This document shows positions 8,210 to 62,529 of a stretch of DNA of 64,000 nucleotides, piece after piece (within the stretch, counting starts at the first letter, position 1; each line of letters begins with the position of its first letter). The DNA is taken from NCBI RefSeq assembly GCF_006345805.1, contig NC_042999.1:146320001-146384000 (forward strand), in the 5' to 3' direction. The DNA is from Octopus sinensis. Taxonomy: Eukaryota. A model generated the notes under the pieces. It had not been told where the DNA came from, did not search any database, and saw only the letters and a program-made list of their open reading frames with translations. Both the position numbers and the translations under genes were made by a program.

Positions 8210-9650
8210 CGTGCGTGTGTGTGTGTGTGTACATATATGAGTATGTGCGTGTATGTATATGCATGTGTGTGCGTGTGTGCATACATATTTTCATACGTAC
8301 GCACACGCAGATAGACATCTACTTACACATATTAATGCTCACAATGTGAACTTGATATATAGTTATAAAAATATTGACAATTTAGTTGAAGAGACAATCA
8401 ATAAGTATATGTGGAATATAAGATTACATCCTGTCTTTCACGAAACTTTAATTTTATGTATTCGCTCTGTCTTCTGTCTCACCAGTTCTGACTTCATCAG
8501 CTTTTACCTTCTATGAGGTATTGTATTAGTGACCTTGAATCATGATATATTTGCTCCAGCACCGTCACGATCTTTATTTTGCGTGTGTGTGCATGTGCAT
8601 GTGCGTGTGTGTGTATGCGTGTGCATGTGTGTGTGTGTGTGTGCATGTGTGTGTGTGTGGCTCCGCTACCGCTTGACATCTTTGTTGGTGAGTTTGCGTC
8701 CCCGTAACCAACCAGTTCCTAAAAAGAGACCGATTGAATAAGTGCGAGGATTAAAACAACAGGCCTGACAGCACTGGGATCGGATGTTTTCTGTTTTGCT
8801 GCAGGTGTGGAAATTTCAAAGTTTATTGAACATTTTAAAATTTGGTGTATTAATGTAGTTTTCCAAGCTGAATCTCAAGAGATATTTCACTTTTGCTAGA
8901 AATTTTCAAAAAAAGTTATAAAGGTTTGAAGGTTGATAATATATGTGAGAAAACAGGATTTAGTAACTGTCATTTTGCGCGTGACAGTATGAGCTGTTAA
9001 CATTCTGAAAATAGCAGGTGCTTTAATATGAAACTGTAAATAAATCAAATTCTGCTTTACGCACGACATAACTTAAACATTTTTATTTTCAAGTTTGAGG
9101 AAATTTTTACGATTTTGTATTCTACACTTGGGAATTCATACGATTATGCAAACCCCTCCAATCAAGAAGATTAGGGTGCGCGATGTAAGACCTATTTGAC
9201 TGTTATTTTTAGCACATCTTTCGACCAGGAAACAAGCTGCAAATGGGCACATTTCGCGTAAAATAAATTTGCTAACATGTGCTATCTCGCAGGAAAAAAA
9301 GTTTTCGTGTTTGATTTGTTACCACGGAAACAGATATTAATGCATCTGTGGCTTACGATTGGCTAAGATTATTCAAAATTTGCAAACTTTAAAAGCTAAT
9401 AACTCTTTATTTATTGATTTATGTCGAAAATGAATTTTCTGGCATTAATTAACACATAAAACTACATCATTAAACCGAATATGAAATTAATTCGAATAAA
9501 AATTAAATAGACTGAATATTGGTTGCCAAAGAGAAAAGATTCCTGGAGTCGATTCGTTCTACTAAAATTCTTAGTGTGGCCGCAGTCTAATGGCTGAAAT
9601 AAGCAAATGGTAAAAGATATATATATATATATACATATGTAAACAACAAT

Positions 9651-9798
9651 ATTGAACACGCATACACAAGGTATGTGTGTCGTTAGTTCATGGGTCGGCT
9701 GCGGTTTTTAGGCGTAAGAGAATATATTCTCTTACGCCTAAAAACCGCAGCTGACCCACGAACTAACAACACACATATCTTGTGTATGTGTGTTCGAT
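9651..9798. repeat. Spacerless palindrome, 74-bp arms
   Basis: Centre aata|tatt at 9724/9725; 6 mismatches between arms, all transitions. Confidence 0.9.
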
Positions 9799-10257
9799 TT
9801 TGCTTATAGAACTTGAACTACTGCTAATTCATATATATATATATATATATTTATGTATGTATGTATGTATGTATGTATGTATGTATGTATGTATGTATGT
9901 ATGTATGTATGTATGTATGTATGTATGTATGTAGATAAGTAGAGTTCGCGGTCGGAGTAACAGTCTGATAAGAATATCCGTTATTACTACCGGTGTAAAT
10001 TACCTATGTTAACCCTGACATTGGCAGCAGAAACGGCTGTAAGTAACGTTCAAGCTTTGTATTAAAAAAATTTAACCGATGGCAGTCAACTTGTTTTTGA
10101 TCAAAAGTTTTCTCCATTGTCTGCTCATTATATATATATATATATTATATATATATATATATAATATATTATATATATTATATATAATATATATATATAT
10201 ATTATATACAATATATATATGTACATATATGTATGTATGTATTATGTATGTATGATG

Positions 10258-12717: not shown

Positions 12718-15700
12718 CTGACAGATCCCGTCTTTTTCCCTTTCTTTTCGTTTCCTTCTCCGTATTTTATTCTCATTATTTCGAACTAATACAGACACAG
12801 TAAGCCTTGAAGAAAGGAAGAGGAGGAAAGGAAAAAAAAAAAAAAAAAAATGTCCGGAGATAAAACTATCAACAAAAAAAATACAGACGAATATAGATCT
12901 GCTAGTCTTAAGAAGCGGCGCTATGAGCAATGCTTACATGTAGTGAACCCTAGACTGACAGATCCATCTCCTAATATAAGAATGGATGCTCGTCATGCTT
13001 CAAGGTCAACAAATCAAACAATAAACCGCATTGGTCATTGCGCGGATTACAAAAGACCACGTACCCGAAAATTGAACCAAATCCTGATTGAAAAATCAGT
13101 TACTGGATCAAATCTTCCCAACACACAGGAGCTGGACGAACCCCACAACCGGAATATTCCAACAGATGGCCATCCATGCTCATCACCAAATCATCAAAAG
13201 AAAAAGAAGGAAAAATGGTCTAGGGAAGATAATAAAGAAGTTCTTGAGGCCTTCTACCATGCCATATATTTCCCCACAGATAAGTCTAGCACTGTACAAG
13301 CATACTTAAACTGGAGACAGAAACACCCTGAAGTAAGACCCTACATAGACAGTAACAAGCTTGCCAATGTTAGAAGAAACATTATAAAAAAGAAATTACT
13401 GACTGAAGTAGAGATTGATCAGGTTAGACAAGCAATATCGGATAAAATGAACGAAGCTGCAGCTAGAGAAGATAATACAGAGGAAATGATTATAGACCAG
13501 CCCAGGGCGGATAAAAACGAAGAGAGGATTGAAAGAGTTAGTATAAGTGATAGGCAAAGTGAAATACGCCCTGAACCAATCATAAACACTAAGACAGATG
13601 AGCATCAAATAGATAAAGAAAGTCACACAAATATTGACCCAACAGAACTACATGAGCTAAAAAATCAAATCATGATTGAATGGCTGAAAATTAAAGAAAC
13701 CAGCATGGATGAGCGTGATACAAAATAATTGGTAAAATCCGGCTTGCACTTAAGGATATAATTTCAGTTAATGATGTTGATATCACAAACCTCAACCACC
13801 TATACTATGCATCCGCGAAAATCTCAACGATCCTATGTGGTGTAAAGATTAGAAAACGGCAACAGTCCCACAAAACGCCTTCTTGGCAAGAGCGTCTGCA
13901 ACAACAAATTAAAATATTTAGATCTGACATTGAATATTTGAAAAACCTTAAGGCTCACAAGATTACCAACCTACAAAAACCCCAAAAATTACTGAAAAAA
14001 TACAATATGAAAACTATACTTGATATTGATGCCACCATAGAAACCATCAAACAAAAGGTATCTGCCAAAGCTGCCCGCATAGCGAGGTATGAAAAGCGTG
14101 TTAGATTTTTCAAGGACAACAACATGTTCAAAAATAACACCAAGAATTTTTACAGGAAGATAGGAAAAACAGCGTTTACTGCAGGGTCTGTACCATCAAA
14201 AGAAGAATGCAGAGATTTTGGAATAAAATCTGGGCAGAAGAAAAAACACACAACGAAAAGGCCCCCTGGATTGACAGAATATCTACAGAACTGGACCCCT
14301 TAGAAGAGCAAAAGTGGGAGGGTGTCAAGTAGAAGATATAAGATCTGCTCTCAGGAGGTCAAGCAAATGGAAGTCTCCAGGAAAGGATAAAATTCCTAAC
14401 TTCTGGCTGAATGCCTTCCCAGAGAGCCATGAACTGCTAACAGAACTGTACAATGATGTTTTGCAACACCCTAGTAGGATGCCTCCTTGGCTAGTTAATG
14501 GGTTAACATTCCTGCTTCCAAAAAGTGAAGAAACAAATGAACCAAAAAACTATAGACCCATAACCTGCTTAACAACTATGTACAAAACACTAACATCTGT
14601 CCTGACGGAATATACCTATAGTTTTTTAACAGACAGCAGCATATTCCCTAATGAACAGAAAGGATGTAAACGTGGATCCTACGGCTGTAAAGACCAACTA
14701 CTCATCAATAAGATGATCTTAGAAGATTGTCACAAACGACACAAAAACTTATCAATAGCCTGGATAGACTATAAAAAGGCTTTTGATAGCCTACCACATA
14801 GCTGGATTAGGAAATGCCTTGAAATGTATAAGATAGCACCAACTCTGCGAAACTTCTTGACTGTAAGTATGAGATCATGGAGAACCACACTAACTCTGAA
14901 CAGTGACAGTGAATCCCTAAATGCTGGTGATGTAAAAATTTCGTGTGGCATTTTCCAGGGTGACTCACTGTCACCACTCCTCTTTTGTTTATCCTTAATA
15001 CCTCTCTCAAAGCTGCTCAATGATGCGCAGTACGGGTATAAAATGTTGATAAAAATATAAATCATCTCGTTTACATGGATGATTTAAAGCTTTTTGCAAA
15101 AATGATCAACAACTCAAGGGCTTACTAGCGATAGTCAAACAATTCAGTGACGACATCAGAATGCAATTCGGCCTCGATAATGTGCAAAGGCTACCTTTAT
15201 CAAAGGAAAAATGACAGAAACATCTAACGTTAACCTTGACCAACAGAATGTCATAAAAGAACTAGACCCAGCGGAGAGCTACAAGTACCTAGGGATAATT
15301 GAAGGGAACGGAATAAGGCATTCAGAGATGAAGGAAAGGATCAGGAGAAATGCTATCGAAGAGTGAGAGCAATACTCAAGACAGAGCTGAATGCAAGAAA
15401 CAGGATCGAAGCAATCAATGCATTAGCTATACCAGTCGTGACTTACAGTTTCAATATTGTTAACTGGTCAATTACTGAAATATGTCAGCTCGACAGAAAA
15501 ATAAGGAAACTGTTGACAATGCATAGAATGCACCACCCTAAGGCAGATACAGAACGACTCTATCTGCCAAGAAAAGAGGGAGGCCGTGGTCTTTTGCAAC
15601 TGGCAATAACAATGAAGATTGCTACAATTGGCCTAGACAGCTACCTGAAAAACTCTGAGGACTGGATGCTAAAACTTGTCTCAAAACATGAAAACAAGAA

Positions 15701-16836
15701 AGCATCATACTCAGTCACAAAACAGGCAAAGGAATATCTAAGTGAATTCCGAATACAACCAATTTCGGAATTAGAGATAGATATACAAGAAACAAGCACA
15801 GAAAAAGCTAGGCGCATGAAAACCCGTGCCAAAACTGCGGCCTTAGATATTCTGAATAATAAATGGCAAGAAAAACCTCTCTATGGCAAATACCCAAAGA
15901 GAGCGAATAATGCAGATATCGACAAAGCCCTGACCCATCAATGGCTAATGGCCTCTGGCTTAAAATCTGAAACAGAGGGGTTTATCATAGCAGCTCAAGA
16001 TCAATGCCTACCAACAAGAAACTACCAGGCCAACATATTAAGATCAGAAGCAGTCCAACGTGTCGTGTATGCAAGCAACAAAATGAAACCATTGACCATG
16101 TGGTCTCCAAGTGCAGTCTTCTAGCGCCTACAGAGTATCTCAACAGGCACGATAGAGCTGCACAATATATATCACTGGGTAATCTGTAAAAACCTGGATT
16201 TGCCCCATGAAAAAAACTGGTGGGAACACAAACCACCCCCAGTGCTTGAAAATGACCACATCTCACTCCTCTGGAACTTCACCATTCAAACTGACAGGAA
16301 GATAGATGCAAATAGGCCAGACATCATATTGAAAAACTTCAAACAAAGAACATGCCTCCTCATTGATATGACTGTCCCAATCGATATAAACGTATCTGTC
16401 AAGACCTACCAAAAACTGAGCAAATATAAAGATCTTGAAATAGAAATCAGCAAAATGTGGAAGCTGAAGACTAAAACAATGCCTGTTGTCATAGGTGCCC
16501 TGGGAATGATAGCAAAAGGGGCTGATAGCTACCTAACTCAGATACCAGGAAACCCAAAATGGCAGAAGTTCAAAAGATAGTGCTCATGGGAACTGCTCAT
16601 ATCCTACGCAAAATACTCTCTATGTAATCTCAAGGTTTAAAACAAACATAATTTTCGTTTAAAAAAAAAAAAATTTTTTTTTTTTTAGACATTCATTAGT
16701 ACAACATCCCCACCCCCCAAATATATGGCACACTAGGCATAACAACAACATGAACTTCCAACCCTGTTGTCTCTTGAGGTCTCTGGGTGAGACTTGGAGC
16801 CAACTTGTACAAATATAAAGCAAAAGTCAAACATAG
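12718..16836 (+). mobile_element. Near full-length R4/Dong-clade non-LTR retrotransposon (RT + CCHC + restriction-like endonuclease)
   Basis: One long frameshifted ORF with N-terminal KWSREDNKEVLEAFYHA. RT motifs: WKSPGKDKIPNFWL, YRPITCLTTMYK, EQKGC..GSYGCKDQLLINK, AWIDYKKAFDS, GIFQGDSLSPLLF, YMDD (~15072). Zinc knuckle CRVCKQQNETIDHVVSKC; RLE RPDII...IDMTVP...K..KY.DL. Ends in (AAT)n after 16836. The 5' boundary is uncertain. Confidence 0.92.
12850..16627 (+). pseudogene. R4/Dong polyprotein ORF, frameshifted as assembled
   Basis: Track ORFs 12850-13728, 13938-14303, 14314-15060, 15363-16124, 16004-16189 and 16200-16580 are consecutive pieces of one polyprotein ending ...QKIVLMGTAHILRKILSM*. 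Confidence 0.85.
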
Positions 16837-20780: not shown

Positions 20781-21185
20781 TGACTGTGTGGTAAGAAGCT
20801 TGCTTCCCAACCACATAGTTCCGGGTTCAGTCTCACTGTATGGCACCTTGGGCAAGTGTCTTCTACTATAACCTCGGGCCGACGAAAGCTTTGTGAGTGG
20901 ATTTGGCAGACGGAAACTAAAAGAAGCCCGTCGTGTATATATATATATGTATATCTGTGTGTGTGTATGGATATATTTGTGTGTGCTTGTTTGTCCCCCT
21001 CCCACGGTCCCTTGACAACCGATGTTGGTGTGTTTACGTCCCTAAACTAGCGGTTCGCAAAAGGTACTGATAGAATAAGTACTAGGCTTACAAAGAATAA
21101 GTCTGGGGTTTGATTTTTTCGACTAAAGGCGATGCTGCAGCATGGCTCCAGTCAAATGACAAAGAAATAAAAGAATAAAAGAATG
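20781..21185 (+). mobile_element. tRNA-derived SINE, family A (octopus OK/OR-like)
   Basis: ctgtgtggtaagaagcttg...ccgggttcagtc...accttgggcaagtgtcttctactata, internal (TA/TG)n, tail cagcatgg..cagtcaaatgac...aataaaaga. Confidence 0.85.
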
Positions 21186-21445: not shown

Positions 21446-21850
21446 AGGCGTAGGAGTGGCTGTGTGGTAAGTAGCTTGTTTACCAACCACATGGTTCCGG
21501 GTTCAGTCCCACTGCGTGGCAACTTGGGCAAGTGTCTTCTACTATAGCCTCGGGCCAACCAAAGCCTTGCAAGTGGATTTGGTAGACGGAAACTGAAAGA
21601 AACCCGTCGTATATATGTATATATATATATGTGTGTCTGCGTGTATGTTTGTGTGTCTGTGTGTTTGTCCCTGCAACATAGCTTGACAACCGAAGCTGGT
21701 GTGTTTACGTCACAGTAACTTAGCGGTTCGGCAAAAGAGACCGATAGAATAAGTTCTAGGGTTACAAAGAATAAGTGCTGGGGTCGATTTGCTCGACTAA
21801 AGGCGGTGCTCCATCATGGCCACACTCAAATGACTGAAACAAGTAAAAGA
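21446..21850 (+). mobile_element. tRNA-derived SINE, family A
   Basis: Full colinear copy of 20781-21185. Confidence 0.85.
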
Positions 21851-26334: not shown

Positions 26335-26414
<80 letters not shown>

Positions 26415-26416
<2 letters not shown>

Positions 26417-26612
26417 GTTTGTGTGTGTGTGTGTTTGTCCCGCCAATATCGCTTGACAACCGATACTGGTGTGTTTACCTCCCCATAACTTAACTGTTAG
26501 GCGAAAGAGACCGACAGAATACTAGGCTAACAAAGAATAAGTTCTGAGGTCGATTTGTTCGACAAAAGGCGGTGCCCCAGTATGGTCGCAGCCAAATGAC
26601 TGAAACAAGTAA
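26415..26612 (+). mobile_element. SINE family A, 3' half
   Basis: gcttgacaaccgat.ctggtgtgtttac...gactgaaacaagtaaaagaataaaaga. Other partial copies: ~39797-39945(+), 42755-42930(+), 44390-44620(-), 45930-46145(+), 61740-61925(-). Confidence 0.8.
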
Positions 26613-26624
26613 AAGAATAAAAGA

Positions 26625-26737
<113 letters not shown>

Positions 26738-26841
26738 TTTGGGTGTGTATGTGTGTCCGTGTATTTGTGAGCTTGTGTGAACGTATATATGTACATGCGT
26801 AAATACATTCGATAGAAATTTTGTCAATACAATTCACTTAC

Positions 26842-27763
26842 CTTAAAATCTTGGTTAGCTCCGAAGTAGATAGGTATAAATGCCAACCACACTATACATG
26901 TGCTGTACATGGTAAAAGCTATGTATTTAGCTTCGTTGAAGTTCTGTGGGATCTTTCGTGTTTTGAAAGCATATACCGTACATAAGATAATGAGGAACAT
27001 ATTGTAGAAAAGGGAGATAACTATTGCTATCTGACTTGTCTTGCACTTTAAAATTAAGGCGTCTTTTCCTTGGAGGACGTACATAATATCTGGTCTTTCG
27101 AAGCCAATCCATGTAAAAGCTCCAACTACTTGAACAGAGACCAAGGAGAAACAAATAATTACTTGTGACCTTGGACTTGTATAGCTTGGCCTTTTCACAA
27201 CTGCTCGAATACCACGATTGAAAATTCGGTAAATTCGGTTGGTTTTGGTTAACATTGAGGCGTAAACGAGGCTTAGAGAGGATCCAAGACCTAAACGCAT
27301 AATAGTGCAAATTGCTATCGATGGCCTGGCAAGCATCACGAATGATGTGCCGTATGAAAGGAAAATACCCAGAAAAAGTATATAACACAGCTCTCGGCCT
27401 GATGCCATGATTACTGGCGTTTTGCTATATAATATGAATGTAACTAAAACGAAAATTGTTGAAACTATTCCTAAAGCAGAGAATGTAATAGGCAGAATTG
27501 CCCATAATGTTGTCCATTGAAGATGGAGGACTGGTAGACGTACGCATGAAGTTTTGTTCGCATCAGGGCGAAAGCCTAATGGACAGTCTTTGCAGGTGCT
27601 GACGTTCTCTAGAATTTGGTAGTCATTGCAGCGAACACACACCCAGCAGCAGGCATCGCTGCCACTTTTAGCATAGCCAAGACCACACGGCTCTGAACAT
27701 ATCGATGTCGGAGTAACATTAGATCCATTTCGCCATGAAATCTTGTCTTCAAATAAACGGAGA
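26842..27763 (-). CDS. mGluR: mGluR large exon: cysteine-rich (9-Cys) domain plus TM1-TM6
   Basis: tttttctctag|T CTC CGT...GAT TTT AAG|gtaagt; 922 nt, phase 2/0. Contains TSICSEPCGLGYAKSGSDACCWVCVRC...C..C...C (9 Cys), TPVIMASGRELCY, KTNRIYRIF, KTRKIPQNFNEAKYIAFTMYSTCIVWLAFIPIYFG. Extends the 272-aa track ORF upstream and joins the previous exon in frame. Confidence 0.97.
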
Positions 27764-32294: not shown

Positions 32295-32418
32295 CTGCCC
32301 GTCCATTCTCCAATCCTAATATATTTATATTCAATATCATCTCTTTGATATTGGTAAACATCATAGCGACCTGGTCCATCGCCTTTTTCATTAAATTCTA
32401 CTGTTTCATCAGCGATAC
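32295..32418 (-). CDS. mGluR: mGluR internal exon (end of Venus flytrap domain)
   Basis: ccattgcag|GT ATC...GGC AG|gtaaga; 124 nt, phase 1/2. Translates (G)[40 protein letters not shown](S), matching FNE.GD.PGRYD..QYQ and IG.W. Confidence 0.95.
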
Positions 32419-33847
32419 CTGCAATGGATTATAAATTAAAAAAAAGTTATATATATATATATGGCAGTAAGATATCCGGTGTTGTTCTAGAAATAAACAG
32501 AATTTGATTATTAAAAAAAAAAATGAATCGTTATGGTAATTCTGCATAAATATCTTATTTGAAACCCTACGCTTATATTCCTTGTAACAAATATACATTG
32601 TTCAATAGATACTTACCAACTGCAAAACACAGAGAAACAATTCTTAGCGAAAGGCGCCGTGAAAAACTAAAACCACCATTATAATTCGTTTTTGGATTTG
32701 GTTTGCAAGATTCTTTATATGAGTTCGTGTGTTGAAGCATATTCTGTTGTGTCTCGGGAGAGTCATTTTCTTTTTGTGCCTTATAATGTAACACACTCAC
32801 CAGTAAAATTTCCACTTATTTCTACTTATTTCTTATTTTTTATTTTTTTATTTTATAAGTTTTCTTTTTTTTTACCTTGAGCATTGACATGAAAAGTTTT
32901 CTCACTTTCAACCCTTAAGCAACCAATGAATTGCTTTTCATGAGGAGAGCAGGTCCTTTCCAAATACTCCTCGGCTACTTTCAACATTCGGCCTTGCGCT
33001 ACATTCACGTCCATTGCGAAACCTTAGCATATGGCGATATGGAGTATTTTGAAGTGAAATGGTAAATCAGCAGGAATTCTAAGGATTATCACAATGAATA
33101 TGTTTTCTCCTTTACCAACCTCAGCAGATATTGTAACCTTCAAAATTCTTATTATACAGTCATGGTGGATTTAAATTACAAAGAAGTTTCATGGGGGTGC
33201 TTATCTCAAAGCAATATAGTGGAATTCTTGAAGGTTCTTTTAAATTTAGACACTTCTTGACGTCGATTAGGAATTGTATGGAGCGACTTATAGTCGTAAT
33301 TCTTACAAAGTAAACGCTACAAAAATATATTTCTGATAGCTTTCAGAAACAATCAGGAAGATCATTTCTTTCAATTCACTAAAGGATGATTTTGCTGTTG
33401 TCATATCAACTCTTTCTTGCGCTTCTGGTTTGCATTTATCATTGACTACTTGTAGAAATTTGTAAATTTCCATGTAGTTATCTACATGGAAATTTACAAA
33501 TTTACAAATTAGCAGATGAAAGTAATTTTGTTACCTTTTTTCAAGGATACTAAGACTTTAAACAAAATTTAAGTTCATCTGTTGGACCAACAAGTAGCGA
33601 TTGTCTGAACTCATTTACTTCTATTATATTTCCTGTTTCCAGAAAAACGCCACAATTTTTCTTTCATATTTAAACGCAATTGAACGTGTTGTCATTTGAA
33701 GTAGACGTAGTTGAAACCATGTGAAAGAAGAGCGACAAAGCTTTAACGGTTTCTGAAATACTGATTTCAAATCCTGGCACAAGGCCAGCAATTTTGGATG
33801 AGGGAGTAAGTCGATAACATCTACCCCTACAGCTCAACTAGTGCTTA

Positions 33848-40209: not shown

Positions 40210-40320
40210 TATATATATATATATATATATATAGATATATATATATGTGTGTGTGTGTGTGTGTACCGTTGGCGATTTTTTTCCTCCGTCTTCCCTTCTC
40301 GGGATCTTTCCTTTTCCTAT

Positions 40321-40355
40321 GTTTCTGACGAAGAGCTCCGCTCGAAACGTAAAAC
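40321..40355 (+). ncRNA. Minimal type-I hammerhead ribozyme motif in a Penelope-type repeat (~40245-40460)
   Basis: GTTT-CTGACGA-A-GAGC(TCC)GCTC-GAAA-CG-TA-AAAC: complete core, 4-bp stem I, 4-bp stem II, palindromic ACGT stem III, GUA site. Confidence 0.75.
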
Positions 40356-40464
40356 CCTCCTTCTTCCCTTCCTTCCTGAGCGTCCAATAATACTATATTT
40401 GTTCCACGTCCTCGCGTTGTGTTTTCTCTTCGTGTTTTCATGTTTGTATTAACTTTAATATATA

Positions 40465-40495
<31 letters not shown>

Positions 40496-40969
40496 AATTC
40501 CTCATATGTGTGTGAATGAATGTATATGTGTATATATATTATATGCATGTATATTTCTTATATAAAATATAGTATATAGCAAATAATATTTGTTCAATAT
40601 ACAAGTAAGATATAACATATACTCTGATACGTTGTTTTCATTTATGGTATTTCATGATTTTCCCCCATCCATTTTGTTTCATTTTGAAATTTTGGATATT
40701 GCTAAAATATAGTGAAATGCGGCGTAATAAGGAAGAAGAGTCATAAAGAGTAATGGAACGCTAAGTCATGCAGTGATACACAAAAGTAATCAGTTAATGG
40801 GATACATCGGCGTCCGGTTAAAAGGAAGAAATCCATTTTTTGGATTGAGTCCAGCGACATGCTGCAACACCGGCGTCTGATACTTCATAAGTAGAAGGAA
40901 AAATAATTGCCCATACTTTTTTAATAACAGAATATGCTTCTAACAAAGTAATTCTATGCTCAGCTGACG

Positions 40970-42377: not shown

Positions 42378-44061
42378 GAGAGAGAGAGAGAGAGAGAAAT
42401 TTTATCCCCATCTGTTTGCGTAGTGGCATTCGAATTGCCACATGTCCCTTTTCGTTTTTTCTCGTTCCTCCCTAATTCTTCTGTCCCTCTGCCTCTACCT
42501 CTCTCCCCTCCTTCCACGTGACTAGAGTTCGGCCTAGCCTGACCTTTCTTTCTTGGTTCGACTACCATCCGTGCAACATCTATATTCCTTCCCATGCCTG
42601 TCATCTCTTATATCCCTGCCATAAGGCTTCACTTCCACACATGCCAGCTTAATTAAATTCGTCCTTAGTTGAAAGACACCTGTTATTAACATTTGTATTT
42701 GTGTACCATTTCTCCGTTTTATCTATCCAGTGTCTGTCGCCACATCACTGCATGACAACCGATGTTAGTGTGCTTACGTCCCCGTAACTTATCGGTTCGG
42801 CAAAAGTGATCAATAGAATAAGTATTAAGCTTAGAAAGAATAAGTCCTAGGGATCGATGTGTTCGACTAAAGGCGGCGTTCCAGCATGGCCGCAGTCAAA
42901 TGACTGAAACAAATAAAAGAATAAAAGAAAATACTCACACACACATATAGACATACATATGCATATATACATACATGCATATGTATATGTGTGTGTGTGT
43001 GTGTCTATATAGACAAATACACATAATATGCATAAAAAAATTACACGTACACACATATATGGGTATATATTTATATATATGCACTAGCAGTATCGCCCGG
43101 CGTTGCTCGGGTTTGTAAGGGAAATAATTATATAACCATTTTTAGAGATGTAAAGTATAATAGCCATCTCAATATGGCTAACCACAAAGGGGGAGGGGGT
43201 GTTACTGTAGCTTTTACGTTCTGAGATTTAATAATAAATTTAGAGAGTTACTTCCCTTATATATGTCAAAAATGGATTAAAAATGGGAAAAATGATGGTA
43301 ATTTTTTTTTTAAATCGTAGACTCATCGTAGACGCGCGCTAATACCCAGACGGTCTCGATATGAATCACGACTATAAGATACCCGGTTTTGGTTAAACTG
43401 CACCGCAAAATGTGGGAGTAGTTAGGAATCTAAATCGTAGGAGACAGACACACAACCTCACTTTTATATATAAAGATTTCCTCTATTTACATAATATTGA
43501 GGTCTCTTTCTTTCTTTTGTTATCTTACTGTTTTTACCAATATACATATATATATATATATATCTCTTATTATAAAAGGCAGATTTTATCTGCCTCCCTT
43601 TGGGAGTTATACAAATCTACAATATAGGATTTCTTCAATTACAATTTACCTAGCAGTTTTGAGAGTACAATGCATCGCGTCATGCCAGGTCCAGTTTTTA
43701 AAATTTAAACTCCAATTAAGCAAAATTTACAGAAAACTCACATTCTGGTGTGTGTGTCAAATGCTTTTCTTAGTCTGGTTTACAGCACACGCAAACGCAC
43801 ACACACAGTGGGCAGCGAATAAAATGAAAGTAATTTACTTACTGTAGTGAGTGATTCTTTCACTCTGCCTCCCACTTCCTCTTTCAACACATAGACACGC
43901 AAATATATAAATAAAATTGTAAGCTAACGTGCGTGTGTGTGAGTGTGTGTGTGTGTGCGCGCGCGTGTGTGTGAGGGTGCGCGTGTGTGTGTGTGTGTGT
44001 GTGTGCGTGTGCGTGAGTGTGTGACAGGAAAGTTTTTTACGACGAATATAAGTAGCAGAAA

Positions 44062-44340
44062 GATAAGACAGTAAGGTGTGATTTGAGGGAGATTTGGCTG
44101 CTATTTCTACCATGTCTAGCTGCCATGTAGGGGTCTCCCTCATAGGCTCATACATACATATATACATAGATAAGACAGTAAGGTGTGATTTGGGGGAAAT
44201 TTGGCTGCTATTTCTACAGGTCTAGCTACCATGTAGAGGTCCTCCTCATTGGCTCATATATATATACATACATAAGACAGTAAGGTGTGATTGAGGGAGA
44301 TTTGGCTGCTGTTTCTACCAGGTCTGTTAGGCCTTCTCAT
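44062..44340. repeat. ~100-bp tandem triplication inside the Helitron (mirror copy ~46205-46475)
   Basis: taagacagtaaggtgtgatttg.ggga.atttggctgct occurs three times. Confidence 0.85.
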
Positions 44341-44648
44341 GTAAACTCAAGCTTTCTCATGACTTGAACATAAGACCAAAGCAGAGAATGTATTCTTTTA
44401 TTCTTCTGCTTTTTCCAGCCATTGGTCTGTGGCCATGCTGGGGCAATGCCTTGAAGAATTGTAGTTTAATGAATCAACTCCAGTTTTATTTTTGTAAGCA
44501 TTGTACTTATTCTATCTGTTTCCTTTGTCAAACCACTAGGTGACAGGGATGTAAACAAACCAACATTCGTTGTCAAGCAGTGGTGGAGGACAATCACAAG
44601 CACAGACACGCACACACACACACATACATGCATACACATATACACACA

Positions 44649-44684
<36 letters not shown>

Positions 44685-44702
44685 TATGTGTGTATATATA
44701 TA

Positions 44703-44961
44703 TTGCAGCGTGGAAGGTGTTGTAAGCCATTTAAGAAAAACACACAAAAACCGTTACATTCACTTCAACATTTAAATTTCATTTGCCAAAATATTTTCGT
44801 CGCTTTGAGACCGCGACCTGTTCACTGACAAAAATATCGTGCTAACAGGTCGCGGTCTCAAAGCGACGAAAATATTTTGACAAATTAAATTTAAATGTTG
44901 AAGTGAATCTAACGGTTTTTGTGTGTTCTTAAATGGCTTATAAACACCTTCAACGCTGCAA
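44703..44961. mobile_element. Hairpin MITE (~120-bp arms, ~21-bp spacer) carried inside the Helitron; second copy ~45592-45848
   Basis: ttgcagcgtggaaggtg...cgcgacctgtt versus aacaggtcgcg...caccttcaacgctgcaa. Confidence 0.8.
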
Positions 44962-45865
44962 CTGTTTTCGTTCAGCACACGATCTCAGATCAAGTCACTT
45001 GCTATGCAAGTACATCTCTGTAACTATTTATATATTTATATATATATATATATGTATATTGGTAAAAACAGTAAGATAACAAAAGAAAGAAGAGACCTCA
45101 ATATTATGTAAATAGAGGAAATTTATATATAAAAGTGAGGTTGTGTGTCTGTCTCCTACGATTTAGATTCCTAACTACTCCCACATTTTGCGGTGCAGTT
45201 TAACCAAAAACCGGGTTATTTATAGTCGTGATTCATATCGAGACCGTCTGGGTATTAGCGCGCGTCTACGATGAGTCTACGATTTAAAAAAAAAATTACC
45301 ATCAATTTTTCCCATTTTTAATCCATTTTGACATATATAAGGGAAGTAACTCTCTAAAATTTATTATTAAATCTCAGAACGTAAAAAGCTACAGTAACAC
45401 CCCTCCCCCTTTGTGGTTAGCCATATTGAGATGGCTATTATACTTTACATCTCTAAAAATGGTTATATAATTATTTCCCTTACAAACCCGAGCAACGCCG
45501 GGCGATACTGCTAGTAAATATATAAATAGTTACAGAGATGTACTTGCATAGCAAGTGACTTGATCTGAGATCGTGTGCTGGAACGAAAACAGTTGCAGCG
45601 TTGAAGGTGTTTATAAGCCATTTAAGAAACACACAAAAACCGTTAGATTCACTTCAACATTTAAATTTAATTTGTCAAAATATTTTCGTCGCTTTGAGAC
45701 GCGCACTGTAGCACGATATTTTGTCAGTGAACAGGTCGCGGTCTCAAAGCGACGAAAATATTTTGGCAAATGAAATTTAAATGTTGAAGTGAATGTAACG
45801 GTTTTTGTGTGTTTCTTAAATGGCTTACAAACACCTTCCACGCTGCAATATATATACACACATAA

Positions 45866-45896
<31 letters not shown>

Positions 45897-46565
45897 GTGT
45901 ATATGGTATGCATGTATGTGTGTGTGTGTGCGTGTCTGTGCTTGTGATTGTCCTCCACCACTGCTTGACAACGAATGTTGGTTTGTTTACATCCCTGTCA
46001 CCTAGTGGTTTGACAAAGGAAACAGATAGAATAAGTACAATGCTTACAAAATAAACTGGAGTTGATTCATTAAACTACAATTCTTCAAGCATTGCCCCAG
46101 CATGGCCACAGACCAATGGCTGGAAAAAGCAGAAGAATAAAAGAATACATTCTCTGCTTTGTCTTATGTTCAAGTCATGAGAAAGCTTGAGTTTACATGA
46201 GAAGGCCTAACAGACCTGGTAGAAACAGCAGCCAAATCTCCCTCAAATCACACCTTACTGTCTTATGTATGTATATATATATGAGCCAATGAGGAGGACC
46301 TCTACATGGTAGCTAGACCTGGTAGAAATAGCAGCCAAATTTCCCCCAAATCACACCTTACTGTCTTATCTATGTATATATGTATGTATGAGCCTATGAG
46401 GGAGACCCCTACATGGCAGCTAGACATGGTAGAAATAGCAGCCAAATCTCCCTCAAATCACACCTTACTGTCTTATCTTTCTGCTACTTATATTCGTCGT
46501 AAAAAACTTTCCTGTCACACACTCACGCACACGCACACACACACACACACACACGCGCACCCTCA

Positions 46566-46596
<31 letters not shown>

Positions 46597-47009
46597 TCAC
46601 ACACGCACGTTAGCTTACAATTTTATTTATATATTTGCGTGTCTATGTGTTGAAAGAGGAAGTGGGAGGCAGAGTGAAAGAATCACTCACTACAGTAAGT
46701 AAATTACTTTCATTTTATTCGCTGCCCACTGTGTGTGTGCGTTTGCGTGTGCTGTAAACCAGACTAAGAAAAGCATTTGACACACACACCAGAATGTGAG
46801 TTTTCTGTAAATTTTGCTTAATTGGAGTTTAAATTTTAAAAACTGGACCTGGCATGACGCGATGCATTGTACTCTCAAAACTGCTAGGTAAATTGTAATT
46901 GAAGAAATCCTATATTGTAGATTTGTATAACTCCCAAAGGGAGGCAGATAAAATCTGCCTTTTATAATAAGAGATATATATCCATGTTGATTCGTTAGCT
47001 ACTGCACGC

Positions 47010-47195
47010 ATCTTTTTTCTCTCCTTCTTTCTGTGTTTTTCTCTCTCTGTGTATCTTTCTGTTGAAGAGCGTAGGCTCGAAACGTTTTAAAGACTTGTTT
47101 ATTTATATTTTCCTGAGCGCCATACTAATACAATTGTTCGTTTGTTTTCCACCTGCCTTCGTCTTTTGTTTATTTTCATAAAGCTTCCCGGTATA
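47010..47195 (+). repeat. Penelope-type terminal repeat with variant hammerhead core; related copy ~5925-6078
   Basis: TCTTT-CTGTTGA-A-GAGC(GTAG)GCTC-GAAA-CG-TTTT-AAAGA at 47054-47093. The copy at 5956-5989 lacks 4 core nucleotides. Downstream text (cctgagcg..ctaatac..tttgt...acctg.cttcgtctttt) is shared. Confidence 0.65.
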
Positions 47196-48094
47196 TGTAA
47201 TATATATATATATATATATATATTAGGAATACACATATATACCCACACACATACGGGGAGAGTGTTGCCAACATTCAGATACACATATACTTGTGTAGAA
47301 ACACATAGGCGTAGATAAACACCAATATAAGTGCTTATGTATGTTCATATGTTGCTATAAATATAAGTATAAACATATATTTGTGTATATGTCTCTGTAT
47401 GTGTGCATGAGTACATTAACATATGCGTGTGTGTGTGAGTGCATGTGCTTGAATATGTGCGTGTTTGCTTGTGTGCTTATACATGGATTTATAAATATAT
47501 GTGTGTATCTGTTATCTATATGAATGTGTATATTGTATGTGCCTGTGAATATATTTAAAGTTTTATGCCTATGTTTATGAGAAAAATAAGAATTTGACTG
47601 TCTGAGTTTCTGCTCGTATGCCGTGTCGTATCGCATATTTGTCTTGCATCACCCATTACAGTCTGTCTAGCTATAAACATCTTTACAAAACATTTCCTGC
47701 TCTTAATGAGATCTTTATGTACTAAGTTGATAATGATTTTTCTGTCTTGAAATATTAATGCAAAAATTGACAGCCTGGTGTCATGTTTCTAAGTGTGGAC
47801 ACTCGATATACTGAGCTGCTACATAAAAAAGGGACTCATGACAAACGTTTCATTTATTTTTAATGGGAACTCTGATGAAGTGCTGATTTAATAATTACCT
47901 AAGTACAGAGAACGTATTTCAGCTGTATAATTATCACTGAAACATATGTAACGATGCTATGTGTAAATGTTTACTGAAGAAATACCCGAATCTTGTTTGA
48001 CGCATGCAAAGCAAAGTCTTCACTGAGATATTCCTCTGTACTGAAGTGTTTCTGTTAGTCATATATGAAGATTACTTTTCCAGTACTATGTCGG

Positions 48095-51492: not shown

Positions 51493-52066
51493 AGGGATTT
51501 AGTGTTGCACGTAAATATTTCCAAACATTACATCTCATAGTACATGTAGAGACATCTGTCGGTCGTAAGTGGATATGATTTAGTAACATGGACCATAAAT
51601 ATGCTAACTGATTCGGGGGCTTATGTAATGGTGAGCAGATAATAAAAACAATTTTTGTTGACGCAGACCGACACTAGTTCCTGCAGACATTTTCTTTTCT
51701 TCTTCTTTTCTGTATCTATTACTCGTTGTAGCCCGAATCCTTCGTGTTGCACGAAATGTTTCTCCTATTTCATGATCGATCGTTCTTTTCCTCAAACAAC
51801 ATCCCATCATAAACATGTTTTTATTCTCGGTTTAGCATGAACTTTAACATCACTAACTTGTTTCTGTTTTCACACGATATAAGAAAAATCCAGATATAAG
51901 AAATAGTTACTTATTTCCTTTTTCTTCTTCGTCTTCTTCTCTCCCTCCTCCTCCACCGTCACCAACTATGTATCACTACACTCACAAAAGAAAAAAAAAA
52001 AAAGAGAAAACATACGGTATTTTGTGAGTCTCTATTTTACACACGTTCATTTATTTTTGATCTTAC

Positions 52067-52264
52067 CTTGAAAAGTTACATTCCGGATATGACGTAACAG
52101 TTCTTCTCCGGGTAAATTGCGGCTGGCTCGGCACAATTTCACTTGGCCATTACATTTTTCTTTAATCATATTTTCAACAGCATGTGCCAATGAATAGACG
52201 GAATCAATAACAAATTGCACCAATCCTTCCTGTTGGTAGCTGACCCTGTCAAGGCTTTCGTCGC
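52067..52264 (-). CDS. mGluR: mGluR internal exon (Venus flytrap domain)
   Basis: ctctctgttgcag|GC GAC...TTT CAA G|gtaaga; 198 nt, phase 1/1. Translates (G)DESLDRVSYQQEGLVQFVIDSVYSLAHAVENMIKEKCNGQVKLCRASRNLPGEELLRHIRNVTFQ, matching Y.QEG.V.FVID.VY..AHA and G..LL..IRNV.F.G. Confidence 0.95.
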
Positions 52265-61108: not shown

Positions 61109-61159
<51 letters not shown>

Positions 61160-61255
61160 ATCCAAACATGAAAACACAAAGAGAAACACAACAACGCGAG
61201 GACTTGGAACAAGTATAGTGTTATTGGAGCCTCGGGAAAGAAGGAAAGAAGGAGT

Positions 61256-61290
61256 GTTTAACGTTTCGAGCGGAGCTCTTCGTCAGAAGC
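61256..61290 (-). ncRNA. Minimal hammerhead motif, same family as 40321 (repeat ~61155-61355)
   Basis: GCTT-CTGACGA-A-GAGC(TCC)GCTC-GAAA-CG-TT-AAAC; one stem I mismatch. Confidence 0.65.
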
Positions 61291-61631
61291 ATAGGAAAAG
61301 GAAAGATCCAAAGAATGGAAGACGGAGGAAAAAAATTGCCAACGGTACACACACGGTCACATTTTGAATATATATATATATATAATTTTACAGGCATGCA
61401 TACATACTCACACACACACACGTACACACACACTTTTCTCTATATTGCATTGTTCCAAAAGTCCCAGATTAACCAATATGAAGGCAGGAGATTCAAATGA
61501 GGAGAGCAGTGTCGAACTTCCTCCTTCACCAAAAGCCAATGACATAAGATAGGCCATTGAAAAGTTAATTACTCTGGTAGTGCAACAACATGGTCACAGC
61601 CTTCGAACGTATATAAGAATAAAGAATAAAG

Positions 61632-61735
<104 letters not shown>

Positions 61736-62529
61736 CTTTCATTCCTTTACTTGTTTTAGTCATTGCAGCCATGCAGGAGCCCTGCCTTTAGTCGAGCAAA
61801 TCGACACCAGGACTTATTCTTTGTAAGCCTAGTACTTATTCTATCGGTCACTTTGCCCGAACCGCTAATTTACGGGGACGTAAACGCACCAGCATCGGTT
61901 ATCAAGCGATGTTGGGGTGGGGGACATGTGTACTATCGACGATATATATTAACTACTTTGCGGAAGGAGTAGGCTAATATACAACACATACAATTCATTA
62001 CTAAACACAAATAGTCTGTGTGCAGCTTCTTCAGCAAGAAATTGCTGAACCGTGTTCTTTAACTCCGAGAGGCTACCATTTATTGAATGTGTGTGCATGC
62101 GTATGTGTGAGTGTGATAGTGTGTGTCTTCACAACGTGTGCATGTTATATAGATTGCTAGATACACAAACATATGAATGTGTCTACATTTCTGTATGTAT
62201 GTCATTATTCAGTTTATTTCAAGGTTTCTTGCCAATAGATAAAAAAAATCGGTTTCTAACCTAGATTCAAGGCTCCTTCATTGAATTTTCAACATCAACA
62301 ACAAGGTATATTCGTATGTATGTATGTATGTATGTATGTATGTATGTATGTATGTATGTATGTATGTATGTATGTATGTATGCATGTATGTATGTATGTA
62401 TGTATGTATGTATGTATGTATGTATGTATGTATGTATGTATGCATGTATGTATGTATGTATGTGGAGATTTGTATGTTTTATGTATGTATTCTCATGCAT
62501 ATAGTTGCATATCTAGACATACGCATGTA

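What the first reader, a model, noticed from the sequence alone, without database searches (positions are those of the whole stretch)
43084..46974. A Helitron inserted, inverted, into a near-identical copy of itself
Seen: the layout is A-B-rc(A)-rc(B), with A=43084-43562, B=43563-~45035, rc(A)=~45036-45514, rc(B)=45515-46974. B+rc(A) is a complete TC...hairpin-CTAG element. Deleting it exactly joins ...tatatata|taaatatataaatagtta, the reverse complement of the element's own internal junction. Both copies sit at A|T with no TSD. Most copy differences I found are 1-2-nt indels, so the copies may be identical. Established: Helitrons insert at A|T without TSD. Inference: very recent local self-targeted rolling-circle insertion, creating ~1.9 kb of potential intronic dsRNA or cruciform. 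A simple fold-back read artefact would give a plain palindrome rather than breaks at exact Helitron termini, but misassembly is not excluded.
Basis: partly seen in the sequence, partly recalled or inferred. Interest (0 to 1): 0.8.

Follow-up and report, generated by a model that had tools for sequence, protein, structure and literature searches.

The report
Helitron nested inverted inside its twin
A 1.95-kb non-coding rolling-circle transposon (Helitron) has landed, upside down, in an AT-rich spot inside a second, apparently identical copy of itself within an intron of an animal glutamate-receptor gene. It is a tidy, probably very young example of a known kind of event, not a new one.

Summary
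The layout is real in the sequence. A complete 1,952-nt element (43563-45514, + strand) interrupts a second copy lying on the - strand (43084-43562 plus 45515-46974).

The element has canonical Helitron (HLE1) features:
- a 5'-TC start;
- a small GC hairpin 12 nt before a 3'-CTAG end;
- no terminal inverted repeats and no coding capacity;
- both copies sit between A and T in TA-rich DNA, with no target duplication.

Removing the inner copy restores the element's own internal sequence, apart from one TA unit and one T.

The two copies differ by 0 substitutions and 33 small indels, mostly in homopolymers. That pattern points to unpolished long-read error, so the copies are probably identical.

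- The simple hairpin is about 1.45 kb (B:rcB), not 1.9 kb, because the two repeat pairs cross.
- "Local, self-targeted" origin is untestable here. The one studied Helitron, Helraiser, shows no local hopping.
- The join is exact only to within one TA unit.

Misassembly cannot be excluded without reads. It is unlikely, because breakpoints resembling Helitron ends arise by chance at about 1e-6 or less.

Helitron self-insertion, including in opposite orientation, is already in the literature. No third copy, empty site or independent read evidence could be obtained. Interest is modest.

The parts
43563..45514 (+). Inner, complete non-autonomous Helitron copy (1,952 nt), 5'-TC ... CTAG-3'
   Evidence: The termini occur only twice each in the window. 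No Pfam domain in any ORF. No terminal inverted repeats.
43084..43562 (-). 3' part of the outer copy (segment A). It matches inner 45039-45514 and starts on the + strand with CTAG, the reverse complement of the 3' end.
   Evidence: 0 substitutions, indels only; 97.5% identity over 483 columns; junctions.
45515..46974 (-). 5' part of the outer copy (segment rcB). It matches inner 43563-45038 and ends on the + strand with ...AAGAGA, the reverse complement of TCTCTT.
45487..45514 (+). Inner 3' terminal signal: hairpin CCCG-A-GC/AAC/GC-CGGG (45487-45502), then 12 nt ending in CTAG (45511-45514)
   Evidence: structure found, -4.5 kcal/mol, z -0.64, so weak on its own. Its position matches Helraiser's palindrome 11 nt from the end.
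43084..43111 (-). The same 3' terminal signal in the outer copy (CTAG 43084-43087; hairpin 43096-43111)
   Evidence: exact 19-mer match on the - strand..
43563..43595 (+). Inner 5' terminus TCTCTTATTATAAAAGG, with an 8-bp subterminal hairpin GGCAGATTTTATCTGCC (43577-43595)
   Evidence: z -3.0, 2 of 200 shuffles fold as well.
43545..43562 (.). Left half of the insertion target in the outer copy: a (TA)n tract ending in A at junction J1 (43562|43563)
45515..45538 (.). Right half of the insertion target in the outer copy: TAAATATATAAATAGTTACAGAGA, starting with T at junction J2 (45514|45515)
45024..45056 (+). Uninterrupted paralogous 'empty site' inside the inner copy (CTATTTATATATTTA|(TA)n, boundary 45038|45039)
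   Evidence: identical to the rejoined outer site apart from one TA unit and one T.
44703..44961 (+). Internal ~260-nt near-perfect palindrome of the element. The outer-copy counterpart is 45593-45848.
   Evidence: -124 kcal/mol, z -28.8..
44063..44325 (+). Internal 107-nt tandem repeat, 2.5 units. The outer-copy counterpart is 46212-46478.
44389..44702 (+). SINE-like segment plus (ACAT)n/(TA)n tail carried inside the element. Diverged copies (68-72%) lie elsewhere in the window, including directly left of the outer copy.
   Evidence: hits at 20933-21184, 21612-21850, 26338-26629, 42743-42929, 61799-61915. D7, D9.
26827..27750 (-). Host gene exon: NCD3G/7TM region of a class-C GPCR (metabotropic glutamate receptor)
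   Evidence: (PF07562, PF00003).
32297..32419 (-). Host gene exon (short mGluR segment), downstream boundary of the intron that holds the element
   Evidence: tblastn with four mGluR proteins, E 1e-6 to 1e-8.
52051..52245 (-). Host gene exon (ANF_receptor ligand-binding region), upstream boundary of the intron
   Evidence: PF01094 on the L004 ORF. (L004 match)..

Best explanation
A non-autonomous canonical Helitron (HLE1 type, 1.95 kb, no RepHel gene) first inserted on the - strand. Its site was an A|T in the TA-rich microsatellite tail of a SINE-like repeat, inside a ~19.6-kb intron of an mGluR gene.

Later, a second identical copy was mobilised in trans by a RepHel transposase encoded elsewhere. 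It travelled through the usual copy-and-paste circular intermediate and integrated at an A|T in the (TA)n tract inside the first copy, in the opposite orientation and without a target duplication. The site was most likely chosen because Helitrons prefer AT dinucleotides within AT-rich DNA, not because the element recognises itself.

The event is young. A 95% upper bound on substitution divergence is about 0.16%. The 33 small indels between the copies are most likely residual long-read consensus errors in a duplicated stretch that short reads could not polish.

The result is two crossed inverted-repeat pairs. In the host pre-mRNA the stable form is a ~1.45-kb perfect hairpin (B:rcB) with a 476-nt loop. 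That hairpin is a plausible substrate for ADAR editing or Dicer.

Shown: the layout, termini, flanks, paralogous empty site, indel-only differences, intronic position and fold topology.

Inferred: trans-mobilisation, order and age of events, error origin of the indels, and any RNA consequence.
For: - **Layout and copy identity:**
- **Exact termini and flanks, and the self-contained empty site:**
- **Ends are non-random:** the termini occur only twice in the window. The chance of Helitron-like breakpoints is about 1e-6 to 2e-10.
- **Element type:** no TIRs and no protein domains.
- **Match to a studied Helitron:** Helraiser has 5'-TC/CTAG-3', a palindrome 11 nt from the end, an AT target, an AT-rich context (especially 3' of the insertion), and a retained donor. 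HLE1 is defined.
- **Indel-only differences are unlike real divergence here:** another repeat pair in the window shows 27 mismatches against 5 gap openings. The orthologous exon plus flanks from a related species show 57 substitutions against 11 indels, with 0 indels in the 912-nt exon stretch compared.
- **Fold:** 1,447 B:rcB pairs in the minimum-free-energy structure.
- **Precedent:** Helitron self-insertion, including an opposite-orientation model, is described in Fusarium.
Against: - Only two copies could be examined. No third copy, autonomous partner, empty allele or read-level evidence was obtainable.
- The 3' hairpin is thermodynamically weak on its own (46 of 200 shuffles fold as well).
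- The rejoined site differs from the paralogous site by one TA unit, so the 5' end could be 2 nt further out.
- The region carries about 0.8% indels per copy while the exons carry none. This shows the stretch is the worst-resolved part of the assembly.
- Zero substitutions could partly reflect gene conversion.
Confidence: 0.82

Rival explanations
1. Assembly artefact. The genome has one copy at this locus (A + rcB), and the inner inverted copy was introduced by chimeric long reads or a mis-traversed repeat tangle.
For: - The stretch is unusually error-rich: 33 indels between the copies against none in the 7TM exon stretch compared with a related species and open reading frames across all three exons. 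It was therefore poorly resolved or polished.
- Both new junctions lie in low-complexity TA-rich DNA that shares short microhomology with the outer flanks: 7 nt ATATATA at the 5' side, and an offset 11-mer ATATATAAATA at the 3' side.
- No independent data could be found.
Against: - A fold-back or missed-adapter read gives a plain palindrome X-rc(X). This layout has no contiguous symmetry centre.
- The artefact would need two switches that both use the same internal point and the two exact TC and CTAG ends. That is about 1e-6 or less by chance.
- The structure is 3.9 kb in the middle of a gap-free 64-kb window (no N), which ordinary long reads span easily.
Confidence: 0.1
2. Non-transpositional inverted duplication. 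Replication template switching (FoSTeS/MMBIR-like) or repair between AT-rich microhomologies copied the resident element backwards into itself.
For: Microhomology exists between the internal (TA)n site and both outer flanks. With only two copies, the 'termini' are defined solely by the duplication breakpoints.
Against: - The breakpoints coincide with a full set of Helitron signals: TC, a GC hairpin 12 nt before CTAG, and A|T at all four flanks.
- There are no extra or missing bases beyond one TA unit.
- Template switching has no reason to copy exactly one whole element.
Confidence: 0.04
3. The nested insertion is real but old. The inverted copies are kept identical by intrachromosomal gene conversion, as in palindrome arms, so the event is not recent.
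For: Zero substitutions over 1,922 aligned positions is also what concerted evolution between inverted repeats produces. The arms are long (0.48 and 1.46 kb) and close together.
Against: - Nothing positively indicates age. The termini and internal (TA)n flanks are intact.
- Older repeats inside the same element, namely the palindrome arms and the 107-nt units, have accumulated substitutions.
- Conversion tracts would have to cover both crossed repeat pairs completely.
Confidence: 0.04

Closest known systems
Canonical Helitrons (HLE1), e.g. Helibat/Helraiser (Grabundzija et al. 2016, PMC4778049; 2018, PMC5876387)
   Same: 5'-TC and CTAG-3' ends. A short palindrome about 11-12 nt upstream of the 3' end. 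Insertion between A and T without target duplication. AT-rich target context. Donor copy retained.
   Different: This element is non-autonomous: no RepHel and no Pfam hit. Its hairpin is shorter, a 6-bp bulged stem against a 19-bp palindrome. No autonomous partner or further copies could be examined.
Helitron self-insertion, nested or composite Helitrons (FoHeli in Fusarium oxysporum, PMC5148889 and PMC13342296; nested Helitrons in plants cited there)
   Same: One Helitron copy inserted into another copy of the same family. The Fusarium paper explicitly models insertion in the opposite orientation. Such structures are read as a sign of recent activity.
   Different: FoHelis are non-canonical (HLE2-like) fungal elements. 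The cases seen there were mostly copies with duplicated 5' termini, and the opposite-orientation case was inferred after loss of the inner termini. Here both copies are complete, apparently identical, canonical-type, in an animal intron, and all four termini are intact.
Hairpin-RNA 'killer' loci made from inverted transposon duplications (maize Mu killer; animal hpRNA/endo-siRNA loci). Recalled from general knowledge, not checked here.
   Same: An inverted duplication of transposon sequence, transcribed by read-through, could give a long perfect hairpin. Here that is a 1.45-kb stem inside a host gene's intron.
   Different: There is no evidence here of transcription, small RNAs or editing. The element is non-autonomous, so silencing its transcripts would not obviously stop its mobilisation.

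Membership tests
Canonical Helitron (HLE1) | 5' end starts with TC | tested here: met
   Both copies start TCTCTTATTATAAAAGG. The boundary is ambiguous by up to 7 nt because both flanks end ATATATA.
Canonical Helitron (HLE1) | 3' end is CTRR (usually CTAG) | tested here: met
   Both copies end ...GATACTGCTAG. CTAG frequency in the window is 0.0018.
Canonical Helitron (HLE1) | Short GC-rich hairpin about 10-12 nt upstream of the 3' end | tested here: met
   A 6-bp stem with one bulge and a 3-nt loop at 45487-45502, 12 nt from the end. The energy alone is not significant (z -0.64). A comparable GC hairpin at that distance occurs at 0.02% of window positions and at 0 of 1,351 other CTRR sites (the criterion was set post hoc).
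Canonical Helitron (HLE1) | Insertion between host A and T, with no target-site duplication | tested here: met
   Inner copy A|...|T and outer copy A|...|T. The flanks are unrelated apart from AT-richness. The paralogous empty site is restored to within one TA unit.
Canonical Helitron (HLE1) | No terminal inverted repeats | tested here: met
   The best complementarity between the first 40 nt and the last 80 nt is a gapped score of 8, i.e. chance level. No end-to-end pair appears.
Canonical Helitron (HLE1) | Termini shared with an autonomous RepHel-encoding element of the same genome | not testable with these tools
   Only 64 kb of this genome is available. No RepHel was found among the ORFs of at least 130 aa in the window, and no Pfam domain in the seven element ORFs scanned. 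The species is absent from the searchable collections.
Canonical Helitron (HLE1) | Multiple genomic copies in unrelated sites with the same ends | tested here: inconclusive
   Two copies with identical ends in two different A|T sites, but one site lies inside the other copy. There is no third copy in the window.
Helentron / Helitron2 (HLE2) | Short (12-18 nt) terminal inverted repeats and insertion between T and T | tested here: not met
   No TIRs. The flanks are A and T. Definition taken.
Tc1/mariner-type TIR transposon | TA target-site duplication plus terminal inverted repeats | tested here: not met
   The inner copy happens to be flanked TA...TA, but the outer copy is flanked TA...TG. No TIRs.
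Fold-back (missed-adapter or duplex) long-read artefact | Plain palindrome X-rc(X) with one contiguous symmetry centre | tested here: not met
   The order is A-B-rcA-rcB. Its reverse complement would be B-A-rcB-rcA. The two repeat pairs have different centres and no junction lies on either centre.

The most novel reading that the evidence does not exclude
The inverted orientation may be a mechanistic footprint of cis auto-integration. While RepHel peels the sense strand off the resident (outer) copy, the complementary strand of that donor is briefly single-stranded. The HUH nuclease then joins the displaced strand into the A|T of the exposed (TA)n tract. That would make the new copy necessarily inverted and identical to its host copy.

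Sitting in a transcribed intron, the product would then act as a hairpin-RNA source (a 1.45-kb stem) that could feed siRNA, piRNA or ADAR pathways against the whole family.

The evidence neither excludes nor specifically supports this. Orientation has a 50% prior. The source copy is unknown. Helraiser shows no local hopping and uses double-stranded circular intermediates.
Probability: 0.08. Interest if true: 0.6.

Novelty: new member of a known kind. Interest (0 to 1): 0.3.

Why it matters
If real, this is a self-documenting transposition event. The same locus holds the insertion, the uninterrupted target site and both complete copies. It therefore defines the element's ends and its no-TSD, A|T insertion without needing another genome.

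Two apparently identical copies indicate that a Helitron family, and hence a working RepHel somewhere, was active very recently in this animal, which is probably a mollusc.

The locus also places a 1.45-kb perfect inverted repeat in an intron of a neuronal receptor gene. That gives a concrete place to look for hyper-editing, endo-siRNAs, splicing effects or repeat-mediated inversion.

None of this changes how Helitrons are understood. Nested and self-inserted Helitrons are already known.

Tried and rejected
**Independent confirmation of the junctions.** ORFs spanning J1 (116 aa) and J2 (50 aa) were looked up by exact sequence in the public assembly index. Neither is on record.

**Other copies of the element.**
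- A homology search with the 116-aa ORF across J1 and the 5' end found nothing.
- Exact scans for the 3' terminus in metagenome and viral contigs, and for the 5' terminus in metagenome contigs, found nothing.
- BLAST of the element against the fetched loci L001-L004 found nothing.

**Orthologous locus.** The closest data are Logan contigs of about 1.4 kb from a related species, covering only the 7TM exon. There is also an ENA contig from a more distant relative whose introns are far shorter. Neither reaches the insertion site.

**Organism.** Neither the mGluR exon search nor the reverse-transcriptase search returned a close named species. The best named mGluR hit is Biomphalaria glabrata at 74%. 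The run accessions were not found in the literature library. My impression that the repeats look cephalopod-like is memory only and is not used as evidence.

**Rfam.** There are only sub-threshold microRNA-like hits on microsatellites and the palindrome. I rejected them as chance.

**Helraiser 5' end.** I recalled a resemblance between the Helraiser 5' end and this 5' end, but could not verify it in the papers' main text, so it is not used.

**Rejected readings.**
- A TA target duplication (Tc1/mariner): the outer copy lacks it and there are no TIRs.
- HLE2/Helentron: no TIRs and no T-T site.
- A plain fold-back palindrome: the layout is wrong.
Full report
**1. Observation**

Reading 42800-47300 and running repeat detection show two sets of long inverted repeats in crossed order.
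- 43084-43562 (A) pairs with about 45039-45514 (rcA).
- 43563-45038 (B) pairs with 45515-46974 (rcB).

BLAST of 43563-45514 against the window places its positions 1-1476 on 46974-45515 and positions 1475-1952 on 43562-43084. The internal boundary lies at 45038|45039 rather than about 45035|45036.

The 19-mer at the 3' end and the 20-mer at the 5' end each occur exactly twice in 64 kb, against 0.01-0.02 expected. This is the only near-identical repeat pair in the window, and the window contains no N.

**2. Junctions**

On the element's sense strand:
- Inner copy: ...CATATATATATATATATATA|TCTCTTATTATAAAAGG ... CCCGAGCAACGCCGGGCGATACTGCTAG|TAAATATATAAATAGTTACA
- Outer copy (- strand): ...CAACATGGATATATA|TCTCTT ... 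GCTAG|TGCATATATATAAATATATA

Both copies lie between A and T, and there is no common target duplication.

Joining 43562 to 45515 gives ...CCAATATACA(TA)nTAAATATATAAATAGTTACAGAG. This is the reverse complement of the inner copy's uninterrupted 45024-45056 region, apart from one extra TA unit and one T in a T-run. The inner copy thus serves as a paralogous empty site for the insertion into the outer copy.

With only two copies, the 5' boundary is resolved to within 7 nt, because both flanks end ATATATA. The 3' boundary is resolved to within 1 nt.

**3. What the unit is**

The 3' end folds into a 6-bp, one-bulge GC hairpin (45487-45502), followed by 12 nt ending in CTAG. By energy alone the hairpin is unremarkable (z -0.64). 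There are no terminal inverted repeats. No ORF has a Pfam domain. Rfam returns nothing near threshold.

The interior is a patchwork:
- (GT)n at 43929-44023
- 2.5 units of a 107-nt tandem repeat at 44063-44325
- a SINE-like piece with a microsatellite tail at about 44389-44702
- a 260-nt near-perfect palindrome at 44703-44961 (-124 kcal/mol)
- a (TA)n tract at 45039-45056

The features match the published definition of canonical Helitrons (HLE1): TC start, hairpin plus CTRR end, A-T insertion. They do not match HLE2, which has TIRs and T-T insertion. They also match the experimentally studied Helraiser: 5'-TC/CTAG-3', a palindrome 11 nt from the end, an AT target dinucleotide, and AT-rich context especially 3' of the insertion.

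Here the ends are defined by where homology stops, not by motif scanning. The usual false-positive problem of TC/CTRR searches therefore does not apply. Arbitrary breakpoints would show TC, CTAG and A,T,A,T flanks with probability about 1e-6. Adding a hairpin criterion (set post hoc) lowers this to about 2e-10.

**4. Differences between the copies**

A global alignment of the inner copy with the rejoined outer copy needs 0 substitutions and 33 indel events totalling 47 nt. Of these, 20 change a homopolymer length, 5 are microsatellite units and 8 are other single or double bases. Twenty are missing in the outer copy and 12 in the inner.

Real divergence in this genome looks different.
- Another repeat pair in the window has 27 mismatches against 5 gap openings.
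- The 7TM exon plus flanks compared with a related species' short-read contigs show 57 substitutions against 11 indels, with no indel in the 912-nt exon stretch compared.

At about 0.8% indels per copy, roughly 7 indels would be expected in that exon stretch, yet none is seen. I infer that the indels are residual long-read consensus errors in a stretch that short reads could not polish because it is duplicated. On that reading the two copies are identical or nearly so. A 95% upper bound on substitution divergence is about 0.16%.

**5. Context**

The window carries an mGluR-type class-C GPCR gene on the - strand.
- The NCD3G/7TM exon lies at 26827-27750.
- A short exon lies at 32297-32419.
- An ANF_receptor exon lies at 52051-52245.

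The nested pair therefore sits in an intron of about 19.6 kb. The outer copy is in gene orientation and the inner copy is antisense.

The outer copy landed in the TA-rich microsatellite tail of a SINE-like repeat (42743-43083).

The organism could not be named. The nearest named mGluR hit is the gastropod Biomphalaria glabrata at 74%. The reverse-transcriptase search gave at most 62% identity to unnamed sequences.

**6. Mechanism**

The best explanation is two successive trans-mobilised Helitron insertions. The second went into the (TA)n tract of the first, in inverted orientation. Target choice is explained by the known AT/AT-rich preference.

Helitron transposition is replicative and leaves the donor in place, so a copy can end up inside its own family member.

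Whether the inner copy derives from the outer one ('local, self-targeted') cannot be decided from two identical copies. Helraiser showed no clustering of new insertions around donors, so there is no prior reason to prefer a local origin.

Self-insertion of Helitrons has been described for Fusarium FoHelis, including a model with opposite orientation, and is used there as a marker of ongoing activity.

**7. Consequences**

The two repeat pairs are interleaved (A, B, rcA, rcB), so their pairings cross. An MFE fold of the 3,991-nt gene-sense transcript pairs B with rcB (1,447 bp) and forms no A:rcA pairs.

The realistic structure is thus a ~1.45-kb perfect hairpin with a 476-nt loop, not 1.9 kb of duplex. 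Cruciform extrusion in duplex DNA is unlikely with spacers of 476 and 1,476 nt. This rests on general knowledge of inverted-repeat instability and was not tested. Editing, siRNA production and inversion by recombination between the arms are plausible but unshown.

**8. Artefact question**

A missed-adapter or duplex fold-back read would give X-rc(X). This layout has no contiguous symmetry centre. An artefact would need two switches that use one internal point and both exact element ends.

Against that, the stretch is the least accurate part of the window. Both new junctions lie in TA-rich low-complexity DNA with short microhomology to the outer flanks. I also found no independent data.

My confidences are:
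- about 0.82 for a real nested insertion;
- about 0.10 for an artefact;
- about 0.04 for a non-transpositional inverted duplication;
- about 0.04 for an old event kept identical by gene conversion.

**9. Verdict**

The finding is a clean new example of a known phenomenon: nested or self-inserted Helitrons. Its main value is as evidence of very recent Helitron activity and as a defined long intronic inverted repeat. Interest is 0.3.

Noticed in passing
window 26827-27750, 32297-32419, 52051-52245 (- strand): Exons of a metabotropic-glutamate-receptor-like class-C GPCR. The 7TM exon is 100% identical in protein, with 12 synonymous changes, to ~1.4-kb Logan contigs from runs SRR11869390, SRR11869391 and SRR11869394, whose intronic flanks differ by about 10%. 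These are therefore from a related species, not the same one. In a more distant relative (ENA ERZ21867824), the ANF_receptor and 7TM exons lie ~2 kb apart, against ~24 kb here.
   Followed up: partly
window 12850-16124 (+ strand): A non-LTR-type retrotransposon remnant: three consecutive ORFs of 292, 248 and 253 aa, with an RVT_1 domain in the middle one (E 1.7e-16). The ORFs are separated by gaps or frameshifts. The best database relatives are only 62% identical.
   Followed up: partly
window 42743-42937; also ~20933-21184, 21612-21850, 26338-26629, 61799-61915 and inside the element at 44389-44600: A SINE-like repeat of about 200-300 nt with a (CA)n/(TA)n microsatellite tail recurs at 68-74% identity. 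One copy lies directly left of the outer Helitron, which inserted into its tail. Another copy is carried inside the Helitron.
   Followed up: partly
window 44703-44961 (and 45593-45848): A 260-nt near-perfect palindrome inside the element (arms about 89% complementary overall, -124 kcal/mol as ssDNA). It could be a foldback or MITE-like insert or a captured hairpin. In the outer copy, three indels cluster in its left arm next to the central loop.
   Followed up: partly
window 43577-43595: An 8-bp subterminal hairpin (GGCAGATTTTATCTGCC) 14 nt inside the element's 5' end (z -3.0). It is not part of the canonical Helitron definition.
   Followed up: no
window 9647-9802: A 156-nt sequence that is 91% identical to its own reverse complement (a palindrome), unrelated to the Helitron.
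   Followed up: no
window 40226-40496 and 61111-61384: An inverted repeat pair of about 275 nt at 88% identity (27 mismatches, 5 gaps), 20 kb apart. Used here only as a control for normal repeat divergence.
   Followed up: no
window 43068-43083 versus 45515-45528: The 3' flanks of the two insertions share the 11-mer ATATATAAATA at a 3-nt offset. This may reflect a target preference, or chance in AT-rich DNA.
   Followed up: no
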